A DNA stretch of 11,846 nt from Prasinococcaceae sp. CCMP 1430 (Eukaryota > Plantae > Prasinodermophyta), in the NCBI GenBank assembly GCA_013416795.1, contig RQSC01000011.1, positions 381,738 to 393,583 of the forward strand, written 5' to 3'. A program made the position numbers and the translations under genes. Position 1 is the first letter of the stretch. The number at the start of each line of letters is the position of its first letter. The notes beneath the pieces were generated by a model. That model was not told the origin of the DNA. It made no database searches and saw only the letters and a list, made by a program, of their open reading frames with translations. Shown piece after piece: positions 3,645 through 11,846 of the stretch.

Positions 3645-3676
3645 CTAGCTAGCAAGCTAGCTAGCTAGCTAGCTAG
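3645..3676. repeat. (CTAG)n self-complementary tetranucleotide array (8 units, one CAAG variant)
   Basis: ctagctagcaagctagctagctagctagctag, between the convergent stops at 3528 and 3820. Confidence 0.9.
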
Positions 3677-3819
3677 CGAGTGTACTATGTAGCTGAAGTG
3701 CGGGCGGGAGCCGATGGCAGAGTGGGAGGCGATTCGAGTGTGGTGATTTGTCCGCGCCAGTAGCGCGCGCTCGGGCGAAGCGTGTGCGCCGACCGCCTCT
3801 CGACGGCCCTCCTCCTCAC

Positions 3820-6414
3820 TCACTTGGGCGTGCACACGTTCTTCTTGAATGTGCAGAGCTTCTTGGCGTCGCCCTGCTTGCACTCCTTCTTGTTCTTGGC
3901 GGCCTTGCAGAGCTTCTTGATGGCCTTTTTGGAGAGCTCGGACTGGTCGGTCTTCTTCGACTTCTTGTTCTTGTTGTTCTTCTTCTTCTTCATGCCGGTG
4001 GGCTCCTCGCCCTCCTCGGGAGGAGGCGACGGGGCGCCGGAGAGCTTGTCGGACTTGCCGGCCTTCTTCTTCTTCTGCTTGCCGGTGGGCTCCTCGCCCT
4101 CCTCGGGAGGAGGCGACGGGGCGCCGGAGAGCTTGTCGGACTTGCCGGCCTTCTTCTTCTTCTGCTTGCCGGTGGGCTCCTCGCCCTCCTCGGGAGGAGG
4201 CGACGGGGCGCCGGAGAGCTTGTCGGACTTGCCGGCCTTCTTCTTGCTCTTCTTCTTGCTCTTTTTCTTGTCCTTGCCGGTGGGCGACGACGCGCCTGGC
4301 AGAGTGATGTCGAGGGCACCTGCGCTCACCGAGGACCACGCGCCCACGCCGCTCGGCGCGTCCGCCTGGCCGTCGTCGTTGGATCCCCAGCAGTGCATCC
4401 AGGCCTGCGCGACGCCGCAGGTGTGGTAGTATCCGGCGCTCACGGAGGACCACTCGCCCACGTCGCTCGGCACGTCCGTCTGGCCGTAGGAGCTGCGTCC
4501 CCAGCAGTGCAGCGCGCCGTCGGCCAGCGCGACGCCGCACGTGTGGAAGGACTGGCCGTAGGAGCTCCGTCCCCAGCAGTGCAGCGCGCCGTCGGCCAGC
4601 GCGACGCCGCACGTGTGGAAGGTTCCGGGCGAGTGCCTCCTGGTGCGCGAGTGTCACGACCCGTGCAGCGAGACCGGCTTCTCATTCCACCCCCAGCAGT
4701 GGAGCGCGCCGTCGGCCCGCGCGACGCCGCACGTGTGGGCCCCTCCGGCGCTCACGGAGGACCACGCGCGGACGGCGCCCGGCACGTCCGCCTGGCCCGC
4801 GTAGTTGGACCCCCAGCAGTGGAGCGCGCCGTCGGCCCGCGCGACGCCGCACGTGTGGAAGAGTCCGGCGCTCACGGAGGACCACGCGTTGTCGCGCCCT
4901 GCATCGTGCGGCACGTGCACGTAGCCGTCGCGGCCCCAGCAGCGCAGCTCGCCGTCGGCGTGCGCGAGGCCGCACGTGTGCGAGCGCCCGGCGCTCACGG
5001 ATCGCGACGAGTCGTCCACAGCGAGGGGCGGCGGAGATTGGGGGTTGTTGGGCGGCGGGCTCGGAGGCAGGCTCGGAGGAGGCGGGCTCGGCGGAGGCGG
5101 GCTCGGCGGAGGCGGGCTCGGAGACGGGCTTGGAGGAGGCGGGCTCGGCGGAGGCGCGCTCGGAGGAGGCGGGCTCGGAGGAGGCGCGCTCGGAGGAGGC
5201 GGGCTCGGAGGAGGCGGGCTCGGCGGAGGCGAGCTCGGCGGAGGCGGGCTCGGAGGCGGGCTCGGAGGAGGCGGGCTCGGCGGAGGCGGGCTCGGAGGCG
5301 GGCTCGGAGGAGGCGGGCTCGGAGGAGGCGGGCTCGGAGGAGGTGGGCTCAGCGGAGGCGGGCTCGGCGGAGGCGGGCTCGGCGGAGGCGGGCTCGGCGG
5401 AGGCGGGCTCGGAGGAGGCGGGCTCGGAGGAGGCGGGCTCGGCGGAGGCGGGCTCGAGGGGTTAAGGTTGAGCATGTACGCGGCGCCTCGACCACCGGAG
5501 CAGCGAAAGTCGTCGTAGTCACAGGTGTATTCGACGTCGGGATCTTTGGCGTCAGGAGCGCCCACCAGCGCGTAGTCGCCCGAGAGCGCCACGCCGGCGC
5601 CGAACTCGTCACCCCCCGCGCCGTCGCTAGCCACCAGCTTGGCCTGCTGCGACCACGACGTCCCCGAGCGGGAAAACACGTACGCGCTGCCGCTGTCGGT
5701 GCCGCCGTCGTCGTCCTTCCAAGCGCCCACCAGCGCGTAGTCGCCCGAGAGCGCCACGCTGAAGCCGAAGTAGTCACCGAACGCGCCGTCGCCGGCCACC
5801 AGCTTGGCCTGCTGCGACCACGACGTCCCGTCGCGCACGAACACGTACGCGCTGCCGCTGGCGGCGCCGTTGTCGCCGTCCCCATAAGCGCCCACCAGCG
5901 CGTAGTCGCCCGAGAGCGCCACGCTAAAGCCGAAGTTGTCACCCGCCGCGCCGTCGCTGGCCACCAGCTTGGCCTGCTGCGACCACGACGTTCCCGACCG
6001 AAAGAACACGTACGCGCTGCCGCTATATGAGCCGTTGTCTTCGTCCCCATAAGCGCCCACCAGCGCGTAGTCGCCCGAGAGCGCCACGCTGGTGCCGAAG
6101 TTGTCATTGTCCGCGGCGTCGCCGGCCACCAGCTTGGCCTGCTGCGACCACGACGTCCCCGAGCGGAAAAACACGTACACGCTGCCGCTGTCGGTGCCGT
6201 CGTCGTCGTCCCCATAAGCGCCCACCAGCGCGTAGTCGCCCGAGAGCGCCACGCTGTTGCCGAAGTCGTCACCCTCCGCGCCGTCGCCGGCCACCAGCTT
6301 GGACACTTGCACCGGGGCGGCATGCGTCATGCGCACCGCCATGGTCGCCAGCATCGCAGCCCATGCAAGCGGGACGGACGTTTTGGGGCGACGCTTTGCG
6401 GGGGTCGACGACAT
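3820..6414 (-). CDS. Mosaic secreted or cell-surface protein: signal peptide, 5 FG-GAP repeats, Ser-Pro4 stalk, ~6 RCC1-like repeats, Lys-rich repeat tail (864 aa if the 4629-4680 anomaly is corrected)
   Basis: ATG at 6414 (MSSTPAKRRPKTSVPLAWAAMLATMAVRMTHA). ORFs 4654..7272 and 3820..4473 share one frame and are separated by a single TGA (4656-4654) that lies inside the complemented segment. Domain motifs: FGxSVALSGDYALVGA..GxxYVF; SPPPP; WSSVSAGxxHTCG..CWG. Confidence 0.85.
3994..4245 (-). repeat. 87-bp coding tandem repeat, 3 copies (29 aa: GKQKKKKAGKSDKLSGAPSPPPEEGEEPT)
   Basis: Copies start at 3994, 4081 and 4168 on the + strand. Copies 1 and 2 are identical; copy 3 is identical over 78 nt. 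Confidence 0.95.
4321..5000 (-). repeat. RCC1/BLIP-II-like repeat region (basic period 120 bp / 40 aa)
   Basis: Six HTCG...CWG cores with SVSAG motifs plus a partial seventh. tccggcgctcacggaggaccac recurs at 4744 and 4864. Confidence 0.85.
4480..4622 (-). repeat. 72-bp tandem duplication of a truncated RCC1 repeat (FHTCGVALADGALHCWGRSSYGQ x2)
   Basis: 4480-4550 matches 4552-4622 with one mismatch (ctgcgt vs ctccgt). Confidence 0.9.
5031..5458 (-). repeat. Extensin/pherophorin-like (Ser-Pro3-4)n stalk, mostly 15-bp units
   Basis: About 27 SPPPP/SPPP units encoded by near-identical ggcggaggcgggctc/ggaggaggcgggctc repeats on the + strand. Confidence 0.9.
5470..6300 (-). repeat. Five FG-GAP repeats, 165-bp / 55-aa period
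   Basis: ccaccagctt recurs at 6291, 6126, 5961, 5796 and 5631 (exact 165-nt spacing). Consensus KLVAxDGAxGDxFGxSVALSGDYALVGAYGDxDxGxxSGSAYVFxRSGTSWSQQA. The fifth copy diverges, with a Cys-containing loop. Confidence 0.92.
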
Positions 6415-6648: not shown

Positions 6649-7320
6649 AAAAGAATTTTTCCCGCCCTCTTCGCCGCAGCCGCGGCTGCTCCAGTAGCGA
6701 CCATGCTGGGACGCACGCGCGCCGGGGCGAGCCGAGCGAGGGGTGACGTCGCCCGAGCGCGACCGCGACGCGACCCCGAGAACCGAACCGACACACCGAG
6801 TGGCGGATGATGGTAATCTGGGTGGGTGGGGCGGGGGGGGGGAAAGTTTGCGGGGCAGGCGAGCGCGCCCTCCACCCTCTTTCGTCCGCCCCCATCGATA
6901 CCACGGCTGCGAAAGCGCGGGCGTGCGCTCGTTCGGCGCGCGTTTCCGTTCCCGTCCCCATTTCGTTGTGCCCGCTCCGCCAAATGGCCGCGCGTCTCTC
7001 CCATCGGAGAGCATCCGTATCGCCGTGTGCCCCATCCACGTCTGAAATGGCCGCGAAAAAACGCGGGCGAACCCGCGGAAACGGCGCGGAAAGGGGCCCC
7101 CGTGGGTGCGCGGGGCGGGCGCGCGCGCGCGCGCACACGGGAGACGTCGTGTCGGGGCGCCCACCCACCCCGCCGGCAACATCCCGCGGAGCGGGGGCGC
7201 GGCGGGAAATCCATGCGCACCCGAGAAAGCCCACGGAACACTCCGGTCAGCCGGTCCGCCCGCGCCCGCCACGCGCGTGTTTCGGTGGAGTAGACCCCCC
7301 CCCTCGTCTCCCCCTCCCCC

Positions 7321-7702
7321 NNNNNNNNNNNNNNNNNNNNNNNNNNNNNNNNNNNNNNNNNNNNNNNNNNNNNNNNNNNNNNNNNNNNNNNNNNNNNNNN
7401 NNNNNNNNNNNNNNNNNNNNNNNNNNNNNNNNNNNNNNNNNNNNNNNNNNNNNNNNNNNNNNNNNNNNNNNNNNNNNNNNNNNNNNNNNNNNNNNNNNNN
7501 NNNNNNNNNNNNNNNNNNNNNNNNNNNNNNNNNNNNNNNNNNNNNNNNNNNNNNNNNNNNNNNNNNNNNNNNNNNNNNNNNNNNNNNNNNNNNNNNNNNN
7601 NNNNNNNNNNNNNNNNNNNNNNNNNNNNNNNNNNNNNNNNNNNNNNNNNNNNNNNNNNNNNNNNNNNNNNNNNNNNNNNNNNNNNNNNNNNNNNNNNNNN
7701 NN
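7321..7702. other. Assembly gap (382 N)
   Basis: Run of N, flanked by C-rich sequence on the left and G-rich sequence on the right. Confidence 1.
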
Positions 7703-7926
7703 GGGGCGGGCGCGCCCCGGCGAGTGCGCAGGGGGACGACCGCGGGTCCGCTCGCCCGCTGACGCGCGCCCTGAATCCCGCCACGCGCGACGCCCGCCTC
7801 GCCTCCGCCCCCCGCTACGCGCGATCACCGCCGCCACGCACACCTCACCCTCTCGCCGCTCCCCTTTCTCGCGCCCCGCGGTCCCCGCTCGCGGCCCTCG
7901 CCTCCCGTCGCGCCCCACCCAAACAG

Positions 7927-8276
7927 GCGCGCAGCAGGGCCCGGGCGGCACGGTGAAGCGACACCGCTACAGGCCGGGCACGGTCGCGCTGCGCGAGATC
8001 AGGAAGTACCAGAAGAGCGTCGACCTGCTCATCCGCAAGCTGCCGTTCGCGCGCGTGGTGCGCGAGATCGGCAACAACTTCGGCCCGGGGGGGGGGATGC
8101 GCTGGACGGCCGAGGCGCTCCTGGCGCTGCAGGAGTCGACCGAGGACTTCCTCGTCAAGCTCTTCGAGGACTGCAACCTGTGCGCCATCCACGCCAAACG
8201 AGTCACCATCATGCCCAAGGACCTGCAGCTGGCGCGGCGCATCAGGGGCCCCGTCTACGGCGTCGCATCTAACTGA
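7927..8276 (+). CDS. CENH3: Centromere-specific histone H3 (CENH3/CENP-A), histone-fold terminal exon; N-terminal tail unresolved
   Basis: [105 protein letters not shown]. It carries the known CenH3 hallmarks: A instead of H3 Q68, W instead of F84, C instead of T107, and loop 1 longer by 2 aa. A candidate acceptor AAACAG ends at 7926 after a pyrimidine-rich tract; the exon start is tentative. Confidence 0.9.
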
Positions 8277-8351
8277 GCGCAGGGCAGCGTGCGTCTGCCC
8301 GCCGGCCGGCGGGCAACGCACAGTGCAGTGGGCGCCGCCGCCCGCGCGCTT

Positions 8352-8356
8352 TGTAA
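8352..8356 (+). promoter_or_regulatory. Candidate TGTAA polyadenylation signal of CENH3
   Basis: TGTAA 76 nt after the stop at 8276. Confidence 0.45.
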
Positions 8357-8498
8357 ATGAATAGTCGTAGGAATGCAGCGGCGGCGCTGGCGCGGGGCCG
8401 CGAGGGAGGGTGGAGGGAGGGAGGCGACCGCATGCGCCGCCGACGACCAACGTGTGGGGGCAGCGCGCGCGGCGAGCGAACACAAGAGGGCAGGAAAA

Positions 8499-8503
8499 TT
8501 ACA
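8499..8503 (-). promoter_or_regulatory. Candidate TGTAA polyadenylation signal of the SMP gene
   Basis: TTACA on the + strand, about 215 nt downstream of the minus-strand stop at 8718. Confidence 0.35.
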
Positions 8504-8627
8504 GGGATTGTTGGACCGTGGGATGGCCGTGCGACGGCGGCGTCGCCTGGCCAGCCGCCTCTGGGGCGAGGCCCCACGCGGCGAGGCGAGCCCCCGGGGG
8601 CACCGGCCGGCGAGGTCGCCGAGACGT

Positions 8628-8666
8628 GTTTCGGTTTGGTTTGGTTTGGATTGGATTGGATTCGAT
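8628..8666. repeat. Degenerate pentanucleotide array (GGTTT)3(GGATT)3
   Basis: gtttc ggttt ggttt ggttt ggatt ggatt ggatt cgatc, in the probable 3' UTR of the SMP gene. Confidence 0.8.
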
Positions 8667-8717
8667 CGGAGCAGGGGGGTCGCGCGCCCGCGCCGCCAGC
8701 GTCGCGCGCCGGCCGCG

Positions 8718-10628
8718 TCACTCGCGGTCTTGTGCGATGAGCTTGCGCACCCTCTTGGAACCGTCGCGCAGCTGGCGACCCTTGTCCCGCACGCTGCGGG
8801 GCCTGGCTGCGCGAGGGTCGCCGAGCCCGACGGCGCGCGCGCCGTCCTCCCCCTCGAACGACGACCTGGCGCGCATGAAGAGGGGCGACTGCTGCAGCGC
8901 CACGTTGCTGCGGCTGGCGCCGGTGAGCGCGGCCATCCAGCGGTCGCGCTCGGCAGCGCTGTGGGCGATCATCAGCAGCGTGCCGTTGGAGAGCATGGGC
9001 CGGCCCGGCGGCGCGAGGCCGAACGCGTACGTGCCGAACCTCTCCGGCGGCGCGGGGGCGCCCGACCGGCGTATGTCGGCGATGGTGAGCACGCTCACCT
9101 CGGACGCCACCGTGAGCGCCTCCGTGCCGCGCTTGTTCTCGCAGGACGAGTCGCGGTAGTACATCAGCACGCCGCCGTCGTCGCCGCCCAGGCCCTGGCG
9201 CACGGTGGCCGGGCTCTTGAGCGCGCCCACGCCGCCGCTGCTCGCGGGCGTGAGCACGAAGTACCTGCGCTTCCAGGCGCTCATGTAGCCGAAGCCGTGC
9301 CGCACGTCGTCCTTCACGTGCACCTTGGCGAGCCAGCCGGAGGTGGACTCCTCGGCGGGGCGCAGCCGGCCGAGCCCCGCGCCCGGCGCGGAGGTCACGA
9401 GCCCCGCGAGGCTCGGCGCGTGCATCAGCACGCGCACCTTGAGGCGCCCGCAGCCCTGCGGCGCCAGGTCGATCCACAGCACGCGCGAGCGCTGGGGCGG
9501 CTGGCCCTTCTCGGCGCGCGCGACCTCCATCTCGGCGTTCTTCAGGAAGTGCGCGGCGTGGATGATGCAGCTGCCCACCGAGCGCACGGGCGTGACGTCC
9601 GACTGGTACACCTCCACCTCCACGCACGCGTCCTCCAGCCACTGCACCACCTCGAAGGTGGCCGGCGAGGGCACCGCCCACGAGCAGCGCCCCCTGTGCG
9701 CCTCGGCGGCCGGCGTGGTGCACGTGGTGCGCCGCGCGGTGCCCACCGCGTGCGCCAGCCGACAGCGCACGTCGCCGTCGAGCTGCCCGCCGCCCAGGCC
9801 CTCGGCGGCCTCCAGCGAGACGGCCAGCCACGCGGTGGCGTCGACCGACACGCCCCTGGCGTCGACGGCGTCGTAGCCCGACTCGCGGCGCTTGGCGACC
9901 GTGCTGCTCGCGAGCACGCCCTCCGGGGGGCGCCGCTGCGAGGCCCACATGACGGGCAGCCGGCGGCGCCCCCAGAAGGCCTCCGCGTCCCACGTGACCT
10001 CGTTGGGCGCCACCAGCGTGGAGCGCACCAGCCTGTCGATGGCGCCGCGCAGCCACGCCTCGACGCCCGGGATGTCGGTCGCCCCCGACACGCTGAAGTT
10101 GATCTGCGGCGGGCCGAGGAACTGCACGCCCAGCAGGCGCATGTGCGGCGGCCAGGGCAGCCACTCGAGGCGCACGCGCACGCGGCCGCGCACGCACGCG
10201 CCGGAGAGCACCAGCTTGACGGGGATGCCCAGCTTGGCCTCGCGGCCGCTCAGCTCGACGCGCAGGTCGGGCATGTCGGCCACCATCTCGATGTCCACCA
10301 CGGTGCAGTGCTGCAGGTTGGGCAGGTCGGGCTTCTCGTCCTTGGGCCCCCGGCCGTGGAGCACGTGCACGTCCACGAGCGCGGGCGGCGCGCTGCCCAG
10401 CCGGAACTTGGCCAGCCTGAGCTCGGCGAGCATCTTGGGCGGCGGCCTGCGCGCGAGCGCGTCGCCCACCTGGCGCGACGTCAGCCGGCTCAGGAAGGGG
10501 CTCAGCCAGCCGGGCCACATGTCCTCCAGCAGCGCCTGGACGGCGGGCGCGCCGCCGCCGAGGGGCCCGCCGCCCGCGCCGCCCGCGGACTTGACCAGGC
10601 GGCGCAGCAGCGCGGCCTCGGCGGACAT
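8718..10628 (-). CDS. SMP domain - C2 domain - PH domain protein (synaptotagmin-like membrane contact site tether), main reading frame
   Basis: SMP-like ~10540-9990 (QALLEDMWP..LRLAKFRLGSAPP..FLGPPQINF..IPGVEAWLRGAIDRLVRSTLVAPN). C2-like ~9830-9545 (WLAVSLEAAEGL..VEVEVYQSD..VGSCII). PH-like ~9340-8915 (SGWLAK..WKRRYFVL..LMYYRD..AERDRWMAAL). Confidence 0.8.
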   Translation of the reverse strand: MSAEAALLRRLVKSAGGAGGGPLGGGAPAVQALLEDMWPGWLSPFLSRLTSRQVGDALARRPPPKMLAELRLAKFRLGSAPPALVDVHVLHGRGPKDEKPDLPNLQHCTVVDIEMVADMPDLRVELSGREAKLGIPVKLVLSGACVRGRVRVRLEWLPWPPHMRLLGVQFLGPPQINFSVSGATDIPGVEAWLRGAIDRLVRSTLVAPNEVTWDAEAFWGRRRLPVMWASQRRPPEGVLASSTVAKRRESGYDAVDARGVSVDATAWLAVSLEAAEGLGGGQLDGDVRCRLAHAVGTARRTTCTTPAAEAHRGRCSWAVPSPATFEVVQWLEDACVEVEVYQSDVTPVRSVGSCIIHAAHFLKNAEMEVARAEKGQPPQRSRVLWIDLAPQGCGRLKVRVLMHAPSLAGLVTSAPGAGLGRLRPAEESTSGWLAKVHVKDDVRHGFGYMSAWKRRYFVLTPASSGGVGALKSPATVRQGLGGDDGGVLMYYRDSSCENKRGTEALTVASEVSVLTIADIRRSGAPAPPERFGTYAFGLAPPGRPMLSNGTLLMIAHSAAERDRWMAALTGASRSNVALQQSPLFMRARSSFEGEDGARAVGLGDPRAARPRSVRDKGRQLRDGSKRVRKLIAQDRE

Positions 10629-10653
10629 GAGCCGAGCACACTCGCGTTGTTCG

Positions 10654-11382
10654 CTACGGCCTCGCGCGCTTCGTCGACGACCCGCCGGCCGCGGACGCCT
10701 TGGACGCGGCGAACGAGCGCTTGCGCGTGGCGCGGTAGCGCAGCGTCGAGCCCGCCTCGAACACCTCGGAGGCGCCGCTCGAGGCGCCCTCGTGGCCCAG
10801 CGCGCCCAGGCCCGAGCCCATCGCGCCCGAGCCGCCGCCCGCCGACTGCAGCAGGCGCTTGCACGCGAGGACGGAGCACACCAGCGCGGCCTCCTCGCGG
10901 CTGCTCGCGTTGCCGCTCCGCATGAGGCGCTCGACGGCGCGCACGCCGGTGAGCGGGGCGTCGCGCGGGGTCTGAGAGGCGCGCAGCGCCTCGAGCGCCG
11001 CGGCGAGGTCCGCGAGGTCATCGCTTTCTTGTTGCGAGTCGACGGCGGCTTGTGAGCCTCCGAGGTGTTGTTGGGGGTCGAGGTCGTCGCCGTTGGCGGT
11101 GGCGGCGGTGGCGGGAGCTGTGCCCTTGTGCGGGCGCCTCGAACGCCGGGATCGGCGGCGGCGAAAGCGGCGCGCGGCGGCGAGCAGCGCGCGCGGCAGC
11201 GCCCACAGCAGCCCGACGGTCAGCGCGGTCCCGGGGTCGCTGAGCGGGTTGGATGGGGCCGGGAGCAGATGTAGAGGGGGGCGACGACCGAGCGTTAGGG
11301 GGGGGCGTCGTCGTCGGGGTGGGGCGTGCGAGGCGCTCGGCTCGCTGGCTAGCAAGCCAAGTGCCGCGTCGTCGGCGGGCAT
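10654..11382 (-). CDS. Upstream ORF (242 aa), probably the N-terminal membrane-anchor part of the SMP gene in a different frame
   Basis: ATG at 11382 preceded by CAACAACAACAAAAC. High GC3. Hydrophobic stretch TALTVGLLWALPRALLAAA followed by an Arg cluster. Ends at TAG 10656-10654, 25 nt before the next ATG. Confidence 0.6.
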   Translation of the reverse strand: MPADDAALGLLASEPSASHAPPRRRRPPLTLGRRPPLHLLPAPSNPLSDPGTALTVGLLWALPRALLAAARRFRRRRSRRSRRPHKGTAPATAATANGDDLDPQQHLGGSQAAVDSQQESDDLADLAAALEALRASQTPRDAPLTGVRAVERLMRSGNASSREEAALVCSVLACKRLLQSAGGGSGAMGSGLGALGHEGASSGASEVFEAGSTLRYRATRKRSFAASKASAAGGSSTKRARP

Positions 11383-11585
11383 GTTTTGTTGTTGTTGGGG
11401 GTGGTTTGTTGCTGTTGTTGGGCGAGGGGGGGTGCGGGGGGGGTGTGCACGGTGGGTGTGCGGGGCAGACGCCGCCGCGGCGCGCGCGCGCGCTCCGTGG
11501 CACGCCTCGCTCCCCGCACGCCACCGCCGCGCGCAATCTGGCCAACCAAATCGATTTTTGAATCTTGCCTGACGCGGGTCCCCGG

Positions 11586-11692: not shown

Positions 11693-11846
11693 TTCAGGGC
11701 AGGGTTTAGGGTTTATTGTTTATTGTTTATTGTTTAGGGTTTATTGTTTATTGTTTAGGGTTCAGGGTTTAGGGTTTAGGGTTTAGGGTTTAGGGTTTAG
11801 GGTTTAGGGTTTAGGGTTTAGGGTTTAGGGTTTAGGGTTTAGGGTT
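11693..11846 (+). repeat. Telomere, plant-type (TTTAGGG)n, with a proximal variant zone (TTCAGGG, TTTATTG)
   Basis: 11 perfect TTTAGGG units at 11768-11844 running to the sequence end. The G-rich strand runs 5'->3' towards the end, as expected for a right chromosome terminus. Confidence 0.97.

What the first reader, a model, noticed from the sequence alone, without database searches (positions are those of the whole stretch)
4629..4680. 52-nt segment that is complemented but not reversed inside an RCC1 repeat
Observed +: gcgagtgcctcctggtgcgcgagtgtcacgacccgtgcagcgagaccggctt. Its base-by-base complement, cgctcacggaggaccacgcgctcacagtgctgggcacgtcgctctggccgaa, matches the neighbouring repeat exactly 120 nt away (4749-4800) at 40/52 positions, with the first 21 identical. 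After in-place complementing, the minus strand reads CWGWNE-FGQSDVPSTVSAWSSVSA-GTFHTCG, a complete RCC1 repeat; the sole TGA becomes ACT and the ORF is continuous from 6414 to 3820. A natural inversion yields the reverse complement, and no established replication or repair mechanism yields complement-only DNA. The leading explanation is therefore a software error (gap filling, polishing or editing). If raw reads support it, it would be a parallel-strand (mirror) copying event and very unusual. The boundary at 4680 could be 4681.
Basis: seen in the sequence. Interest (0 to 1): 0.85.

Follow-up and report, generated by a model that had tools for sequence, protein, structure and literature searches.

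The report
Complement-only sequence error in algal gene
A 52-55 base stretch inside a repeat-protein gene of the marine green alga Prasinoderma coloniale is written as its base-by-base complement without being reversed; this is almost certainly a software or data-handling error in the sequence record, not a feature of the organism's DNA.

Summary
Window 4629-4680 (right edge may be as far as 4683) matches its neighbouring RCC1-like repeat units only after in-place complementing: 43/52 with 4437-4488 and 40/52 with 4749-4800. No other 52-nt window exceeds 36/52. Three independent ocean-metagenome contigs of homologous genes match the block only in that same transformed form (45, 41 and 40 of 52, against 29 or fewer for raw, complement or reverse complement). 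Complementing removes the only internal stop of an otherwise intact 864-codon gene (FG-GAP repeats, Ser/Pro linker, RCC1-like repeats, lysine-rich tail) and restores the canonical repeat motif.

The window is the end of a Prasinoderma coloniale chromosome. It carries a TTTAGGG telomere, and its CenH3 exon is 100% identical to PRCOL_00004986.

No polymerase or repair pathway makes complement-only DNA, but reversing a minus-strand piece without complementing it gives exactly this result. The window also has a second gene-breaking oddity that ten independent contigs lack. First-stage readers of this scan noted at least 15 similar blocks elsewhere in this genome and none in any other genome; I did not check those notes.

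I found no independent sequence of this exact locus, so the artefact reading is a strong inference, not proven. Read mapping or PCR would settle it. Biological interest is low, but the point matters for data quality.

The parts
4629..4680 (.). Block written as the complement without reversal. The right edge could be anywhere from 4680 to 4683, so the block is 52-55 nt long.
   Evidence: The complement-only form matches paralogous units at 43/52, 40/52 and 40/52 against a background maximum of 36/52. It matches natural homologues L024, L002 and L025 at 45, 41 and 40 of 52 only in this form.
4654..4656 (-). The only in-frame internal stop (TGA on the minus strand) of the gene. It lies inside the block.
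   Evidence: stops occur only at codon 587 (4654-4656) and at the terminal codon (3820-3822). The stop disappears when the block is complemented.
3820..6414 (-). Modular gene of 864 codons plus stop: N-terminal hydrophobic leader, 5 FG-GAP repeats, Ser/Pro-rich linker, RCC1-like repeats and a lysine-rich tail.
   Evidence: Translation. Pfam FG-GAP_2 E=1.4e-101 and RCC1_2 E=9e-18 on the N-terminal piece; RCC1_2 E=7e-14 on the C-terminal piece.
5557..6302 (-). FG-GAP repeat array: 165-nt period, 4.5 copies, 87% identity.
5063..5456 (-). SPPPP-type Ser/Pro-rich (extensin-like) linker: 15-nt period, about 27 copies.
4300..5061 (-). RCC1-like repeat region with a 120-nt period. It contains the block and an aberrant 72-nt tandem duplication at 4480-4622.
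4437..4488 (.). Best in-window paralogous counterpart of the block, in normal orientation.
   Evidence: 43/52 to the complemented block.
4749..4800 (.).
   Evidence: 40/52, with a 21-nt exact seed.
3977..4245 (-). Lysine-rich 87-nt tandem repeats (3.1 copies, 98% identity) in the C-terminal tail.

Best explanation
The block is an error in the sequence record, not in the organism's DNA. Somewhere in assembly, polishing, patching or later handling, a 52-55 nt piece of this locus's own sequence that came from the opposite strand was reversed without being complemented (or, equivalently, complemented without being reversed) and written back in place. For a minus-strand piece R = rc(S), rev(R) = comp(S), which is exactly what is seen: same position, same register, every base swapped for its partner. 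The real gene is most likely an intact 864-codon secreted or surface protein whose fourth RCC1-like unit reads ...CWGWN(E/D/V/L)FGQSDVPSTVSAWSSVSAGTFHTCG.... Shown: the transform, its statistical significance, the restored ORF and motif, and the normal orientation in natural homologues. Inferred: that reads from the strain would show the normal orientation, and which software step caused the error.
For: (1) The clean in-register complement is far beyond chance: 43/52 against a background maximum of 36/52 over about 1.4e8 comparisons, with a sharp left edge. (2) The block is the locus's own sequence. The decoded block differs from every paralogue at 9-12 positions, so it was not pasted in from a neighbour. 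(3) It carries the only stop in an otherwise intact 864-codon ORF with strong FG-GAP and RCC1_2 domain hits. Decoding raises the local RCC1_2 score from 23.7 to 38 bits. (4) Homologous genes in three independent metagenome contigs (L024 from TARA, L002 and L025 from ERZ842040) match the block only in the transformed form, at 45, 41 and 40 of 52 against 29 or fewer for the other forms. Protein P0127 has DVPSNVSAWSSVSAG where the decoded block has DVPSTVSAWSSVSAG. (5) The same window has another gene-breaking discrepancy: 25 nt at 10635-10659 stand where ten independent contigs carry 249-250 nt, which shifts the frame of a 960-aa ORF. The record is therefore locally unreliable. (6) Established knowledge: every known DNA polymerase and repair pathway makes antiparallel strands, so rearrangements give the reverse complement and never the complement alone. 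(7) Unchecked lead: first-stage notes list at least 15 complement-only or reverse-only blocks elsewhere in this genome, including beta-tubulin, EFL and H2A/H2B, and none in other genomes.
Against: I found no independent sequence of this exact locus, so no read-level or second-assembly evidence shows the normal orientation here. Three protein searches, one DNA-pattern scan and one protein-based scan of metagenome contigs, and one scan of prokaryotic genomes all came back blank for near-identical sequence. The published pipeline for this species (NextDenovo, Arrow, NextPolish; PMC7455551) has no documented bug of this kind, and two literature searches found no description of such an artefact. 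The block edges do not coincide with repeat/unique junctions, so I cannot name a specific graph or window mechanism.
Confidence: 0.9

Rival explanations
1. The complement-only block is physically present in the alga's chromosome. It would be a recent parallel-strand ('mirror') copying or repair event that inactivated a subtelomeric gene.
For: Nothing positive. It is not formally excluded, because no reads or second assembly of this locus could be obtained. The gene is subtelomeric, about 7 kb from a TTTAGGG array, and no annotated or transcript-derived protein for it turned up in the searches, so a pseudogene would be tolerable.
Against: No known enzyme synthesises parallel-stranded DNA in vivo (established knowledge). 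The rest of the gene is intact. Natural homologues all have the normal orientation. Similar blocks reported by other readers in essential single-copy genes would be lethal if real, though those notes are unchecked.
Confidence: 0.01
2. The alteration was introduced after deposition, in the copy of the genome used by this scan (for example a processing step or a planted control), and the public record is normal.
For: The window also contains a 382-N run that hides a CenH3 exon present in the species' annotated protein PRCOL_00004986, so this copy differs from whatever was annotated. Complement-only notes occur in this one genome only.
Against: I could not fetch the public record to compare. A single affected genome fits an assembly-specific bug at least as well. 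Either way the block is not biology.
Confidence: 0.1
3. The resemblance is chance: the block is simply a diverged or degenerate repeat unit, and the complement match is a coincidence of GC-rich sequence.
For: The genome is about 75% GC, and the first 21 nt of the repeat are partly mirror-symmetric (13/21 by my count from the sequence), which raises background similarity somewhat.
Against: 43/52 in exact register against a maximum of 36/52 in about 1.4e8 comparisons. A 21-nt exact seed. Independent homologues match at 45/52. Both the reading frame and the motif are restored.
Confidence: 0.003
4. The block is an ordinary natural inversion, that is, a reverse complement.
For: Inversions are the usual way for a short segment to change strand.
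Against: The reverse complement of the block matches nothing in the window (30/52 or less) or in natural homologues (28/52 or less). Only the unreversed complement matches.
Confidence: 0.002

Closest known systems
Strand-handling errors in sequence processing (reversing without complementing, or the converse)
   Same: The outcome is identical: the segment stays in place and in register with every base replaced by its Watson-Crick partner. For a minus-strand piece, rev(rc(S)) = comp(S).
   Different: I found no published description of an assembler or polisher that does this. The tool and the step are unknown, and the block is embedded cleanly inside a contig rather than being a whole mis-oriented record.
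Natural chromosomal micro-inversion
   Same: A short internal segment has apparently changed strand and breaks an ORF.
   Different: An inversion gives the reverse complement. Here the reverse complement does not match (30/52 or less) and only the unreversed complement does (43/52).
Mirror repeats / H-DNA-forming tracts
   Same: There is a same-strand mirror relationship between two sequences: on the coding strand the block reads as the reverse of the expected unit.
   Different: Natural mirror repeats are low-complexity homopurine/homopyrimidine tracts. This is complex coding sequence that encodes a canonical protein motif only after the transform.
RCC1-like repeat (RLD, Pfam RCC1_2) beta-propeller proteins fused to FG-GAP repeats
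   Same: The host gene has 5 FG-GAP_2 repeats and about 7 RCC1_2-type units. Homologous RCC1-like repeat genes occur in ocean metagenomes, one of them (P0123) with the same lysine-rich C-terminal tail.
   Different: This concerns only the host gene, not the anomaly. The combination with an extensin-like SPPPP linker and a polylysine tail is unusual but was not studied further here.

Membership tests
Complement-only (unreversed) record artefact | The segment matches its expected sequence (paralogues or homologues) only after base-by-base complementing, at the same position and in the same register. | tested here: met
   43/52, 40/52 and 40/52 to in-window paralogues against a background maximum of 36/52. 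45, 41 and 40 of 52 to natural homologues, against 29 or fewer for the other forms.
Complement-only (unreversed) record artefact | The transform restores the reading frame and the protein motif of an otherwise intact gene. | tested here: met
   The single internal stop lies in the block. The decoded stretch has no stop. The RCC1_2 score rises from 23.7 to 38 bits.
Complement-only (unreversed) record artefact | Raw reads or an independent assembly of the same locus show the normal orientation. | not testable with these tools
   No near-identical sequence of this locus was found in the protein or contig collections searched.
Complement-only (unreversed) record artefact | The artefact recurs elsewhere in the same assembly, including in essential genes. 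| not tested
   This rests only on unchecked first-stage notes. Within this window, no further block was found by the paralogue scan or by comparing 7703-11554 with ten independent contigs.
Natural inversion | The segment equals the reverse complement of the ancestral or paralogous sequence. | tested here: not met
   The reverse complement matches at 30/52 or less in the window and 28/52 or less in homologues.
RCC1-like repeat protein (Pfam PF13540 RCC1_2), host gene | Repeated RCC1_2 units score above the curated cut-off. | tested here: met
   64 bits on the N-terminal piece and 51.5 bits on the C-terminal piece, against a cut-off of 22.
Prasinoderma coloniale nuclear genome (source of the window) | A window gene is identical to a protein annotated in that species. 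| tested here: met
   CenH3 exon 2 is 116/116 identical to PRCOL_00004986 / UniRef100_A0A7R9TGW0. The window has about 75% GC and a TTTAGGG telomere.

The most novel reading that the evidence does not exclude
The complement-only block, and the similar blocks reported elsewhere in this genome, are physically present in Prasinoderma DNA. That would mean a previously unknown parallel-strand copying or repair process.
Probability: 0.01. Interest if true: 0.95.

Novelty: not a real feature. Interest (0 to 1): 0.12.

Why it matters
The block most likely has no biological meaning. As a data-quality matter it is worth flagging. Prasinoderma coloniale is the reference genome for a proposed third phylum of green plants. 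If its record carries scattered complement-only blocks, as first-stage readers of this scan report for tubulin, EFL, histones and others, then gene models are being broken or mis-spliced, pseudogene counts are inflated, and read-mapping or mutation studies that use this reference lose sites. A simple genome-wide screen would find and fix them: test whether mismatching segments become matches after complementing. If reads did support the block, it would be an unprecedented kind of mutation.

Tried and rejected
1. I looked for independent sequence of the locus and found none.
- Three protein searches were run: N-terminal piece, C-terminal piece and a 126-aa RCC1 piece. None gave a near-identical protein. 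The best was P0128 at 92%, and its contig L002 leaves the homology about 10 codons before the block and runs into sequence of about 50% GC, probably a chimera.
- A flank-anchored DNA pattern with 55 N found nothing in metagenome contigs or prokaryote genomes.
- A protein-seeded scan of metagenome contigs gave only relatives of 40% identity or less.
- I tried walking from the neighbouring CenH3 gene. Its 107-aa product occurs on 24 or more contigs, but all stop 0.2-0.7 kb upstream of CenH3 and never reach the RCC1 gene.

2. An exact look-up of the 767-aa SMP/PH ORF found nothing on record.

3. I tested whether the block edges coincide with repeat/unique junctions, which would fit a de Bruijn-graph edge. 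They do not: the first 21 nt of the decoded block are shared with paralogues.

4. I tested whether the 25-nt filler at 10635-10659 is a complement, reverse or reverse complement of the missing 249 nt. It is not: the best match is 15-17 of 25, which is chance level.

5. Two literature searches for a known software artefact of this kind found nothing relevant. The two P. coloniale papers do not mention it.

6. A paralogue-based scan of the whole window for further complement-only or reverse-only blocks found only low-complexity hits.

Full report
**Observation**

The 52 bases at 4629-4680 are as quoted. Their base-by-base complement, left in place and unreversed, matches the neighbouring repeat units on the same strand:
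- 43/52 with 4437-4488
- 40/52 with 4749-4800, exactly 120 nt away, with the first 21 bases identical
- 40/52 with 4323-4374

The raw block, its reverse and its reverse complement find nothing better than 30/52 anywhere in the window.

An exhaustive scan of every 52-nt window against every offset (about 1.4e8 comparisons) gives a complement-only maximum of 36/52 outside this block. Only pairs that involve the block reach 37-43. A 13-mer seed scan for complement-only and reverse-only matches finds nothing else in the window except low-complexity runs.

Column-by-column comparison with three paralogous units shows a sharp left edge. Position 4628 matches raw, and 4629 onward matches only after complementing. 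The right edge falls between 4680 and 4683, because the paralogues diverge there. The block is therefore 52-55 nt long. The four possible edges give E, D, V or L at one variable repeat position, and all keep the frame.

**Context**

- The window is about 75% GC. It ends in 21 copies of AGGGTTT, which is the plant-type TTTAGGG telomere.
- A histone-fold gene at 7926-8273 (+) is 116/116 identical to the Prasinoderma coloniale protein PRCOL_00004986 / UniRef100_A0A7R9TGW0. The window is therefore a chromosome end of that alga or a near-identical strain.
- Ocean-metagenome contigs (TARA, plus one Logan assembly) match window 7703-10634 at 97.4-99.4% and 10660 onward at 91-98%.

The block lies in a minus-strand gene running from 6414 to 3820. 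In order, the gene encodes:
- a hydrophobic N-terminal leader
- five FG-GAP_2 repeats (Pfam E=1.4e-101)
- an SPPPP-type linker of about 130 residues
- about seven RCC1_2-type repeats (E=9e-18 and 7e-14 on the two pieces)
- a lysine-rich tail built partly of 87-nt repeats

In that frame the only internal stop is the codon at 4654-4656, which is inside the block.

**What decoding does**

With the block complemented in place, the coding strand reads ...ADGALHCWGWNEFGQSDVPSTVSAWSSVSAGTFHTCGVAL.... This is a complete unit of the same type as its neighbours, with no stop. A 49-residue peptide around it scores 38 bits on Pfam RCC1_2. The same stretch with the record's reading and X at the stop scores 23.7 bits.

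**Independent natural sequences**

I found no independent copy of this exact locus. Homologous genes do exist in metagenome assemblies:
- P0127, on the TARA scaffold L024
- P0128, on L002
- P0123, on L025, which shares the lysine-rich C-terminal tail at 93% nucleotide identity over 3820-3990

These loci are oriented with the gene on the plus strand. Against them, only the reverse-only form of the window's plus-strand block matches, and that form is what the coding strand would read after in-place complementing. It scores 45/52 (L024), 41/52 (L002) and 40/52 (L025). The raw, complement and reverse-complement forms score 24-29. P0127 carries DVPSNVSAWSSVSAG where the decoded block has DVPSTVSAWSSVSAG. 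The family's natural orientation is therefore the decoded one, and the record's orientation occurs in no natural homologue.

**Interpretation**

All known DNA synthesis and repair produces antiparallel strands. Any natural strand change yields the reverse complement, and that was tested here and excluded. A complement without reversal is, however, exactly what results when a piece taken from the opposite strand is reversed but not complemented, since rev(rc(S)) = comp(S).

Four further points bear on this:
- The decoded block differs from every paralogue at 9-12 positions. It is the locus's own sequence mishandled, not a neighbour pasted in.
- The rest of the gene is intact, which argues against an old pseudogene.
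- The same window has a second gene-breaking discrepancy. At 10635-10659, 25 unrelated bases stand where ten independent contigs (nine ENA/TARA, one Logan) all carry 249-250 very GC-rich bases.
- As a result, a 960-residue SMP-domain ORF is split between frames -3 and -1 in the window. Residues 1-239 are 97.5% identical and residues 323-960 are 100% identical to the metagenome protein.

The record is therefore locally unreliable, or else the strain carries lesions there.

First-stage readers of this scan have noted at least 15 other complement-only or reverse-only blocks in this genome. Several are said to be exactly 55 nt, and they include beta-tubulin, EFL, H2A/H2B and others. No such note exists for any other genome. 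I could not check those notes. If they hold, blocks inside essential single-copy genes would rule out biology.

**What I could not do**

I could not obtain reads, the public assembly record, or a second assembly of this locus. All of the following were blank for near-identical sequence:
- three protein searches
- a flank-anchored DNA pattern in metagenome contigs
- a protein-seeded metagenome scan
- a scan of prokaryote genomes
- walking from the neighbouring CenH3 gene

No annotated or transcript-derived P. coloniale protein for this gene appeared in the length ranges searched, so the gene may be unannotated. The published pipeline (NextDenovo, Arrow, NextPolish; PMC7455551) has no documented bug of this type, and literature searches found none. 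I therefore cannot name the responsible step. I also cannot exclude that the alteration arose after deposition, in the copy scanned here.

**Verdict**

The best explanation, at about 0.9, is a record-level strand-handling artefact and not a biological feature. The real-lesion reading keeps about 1%. Interest is low as biology. The finding is worth passing to whoever curates this assembly, together with the simple genome-wide complement-only screen described under next steps.

Noticed in passing
window 10635-10659 (minus-strand gene about 8721-11382): 25 unrelated bases replace 249-250 GC-rich bases that are present in all ten independent metagenome or Logan contigs of this locus (L014-L023). 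A 960-aa SMP_MUG190-like/PH-domain ORF is thereby split between two frames in the window. This is either an assembly error or a strain-specific deletion with filler.
   Followed up: partly
window 7321-7702: A run of 382 N. The TARA scaffold L014 shows that exon 1 of the CenH3-like gene (MARTKTSQPSKLGGLKHKKKSAQSAPG, as in P. coloniale PRCOL_00004986) and the start of its intron of about 460 nt lie in this stretch. The 60 nt of L014 beyond where a 382-nt gap would end (L014 1-60) do not match window 7261-7320, so the N run may not reflect the true distance.
   Followed up: partly
window 7926-8276 (+): A centromeric-type histone H3 variant (CenH3-like, with a long loop 1 and a divergent tail) is encoded only about 3.5 kb from a telomere. 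It is conserved at 100% in 24 or more ocean-metagenome contigs.
   Followed up: partly
window 11701-11846: A terminal array of 21 AGGGTTT units (TTTAGGG plant-type telomere). It is only 146 nt long.
   Followed up: no
window 4480-4622: A 72-nt tandem duplication (98% identical) inside the RCC1 region creates a truncated 24-residue unit (GRSSYGQSFHTCGVALADGALHCWG) that lacks the DVPS..WSSVSAG half. This may be a recent unequal crossover or a repeat mis-assembly. The unit at about 4380-4400 (GVAQAWMHCWG) is also a few codons short.
   Followed up: no
L002:553-1285 (ENA ERZ842040 NODE_184922): This contig is 93% identical to window 4700-5111. It then leaves the homology about 10 codons before the block and continues in sequence of about 50% GC. 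It is probably a low-coverage (2.3x) chimeric join and gives no information on the block.
   Followed up: partly
window 3645-3677: A (CTAG)x8 microsatellite, a perfect palindromic tetranucleotide run, lies about 150 nt downstream of the gene's stop codon.
   Followed up: no
window 3820-6414 (-): The domain combination is unusual: FG-GAP propeller repeats, an extensin-like SPPPP stalk, RCC1-like repeats and a polylysine tail ending in a Cys-containing motif. The tail is shared with metagenome protein P0123. No annotated or transcriptome protein of P. coloniale for this gene turned up.
   Followed up: partly
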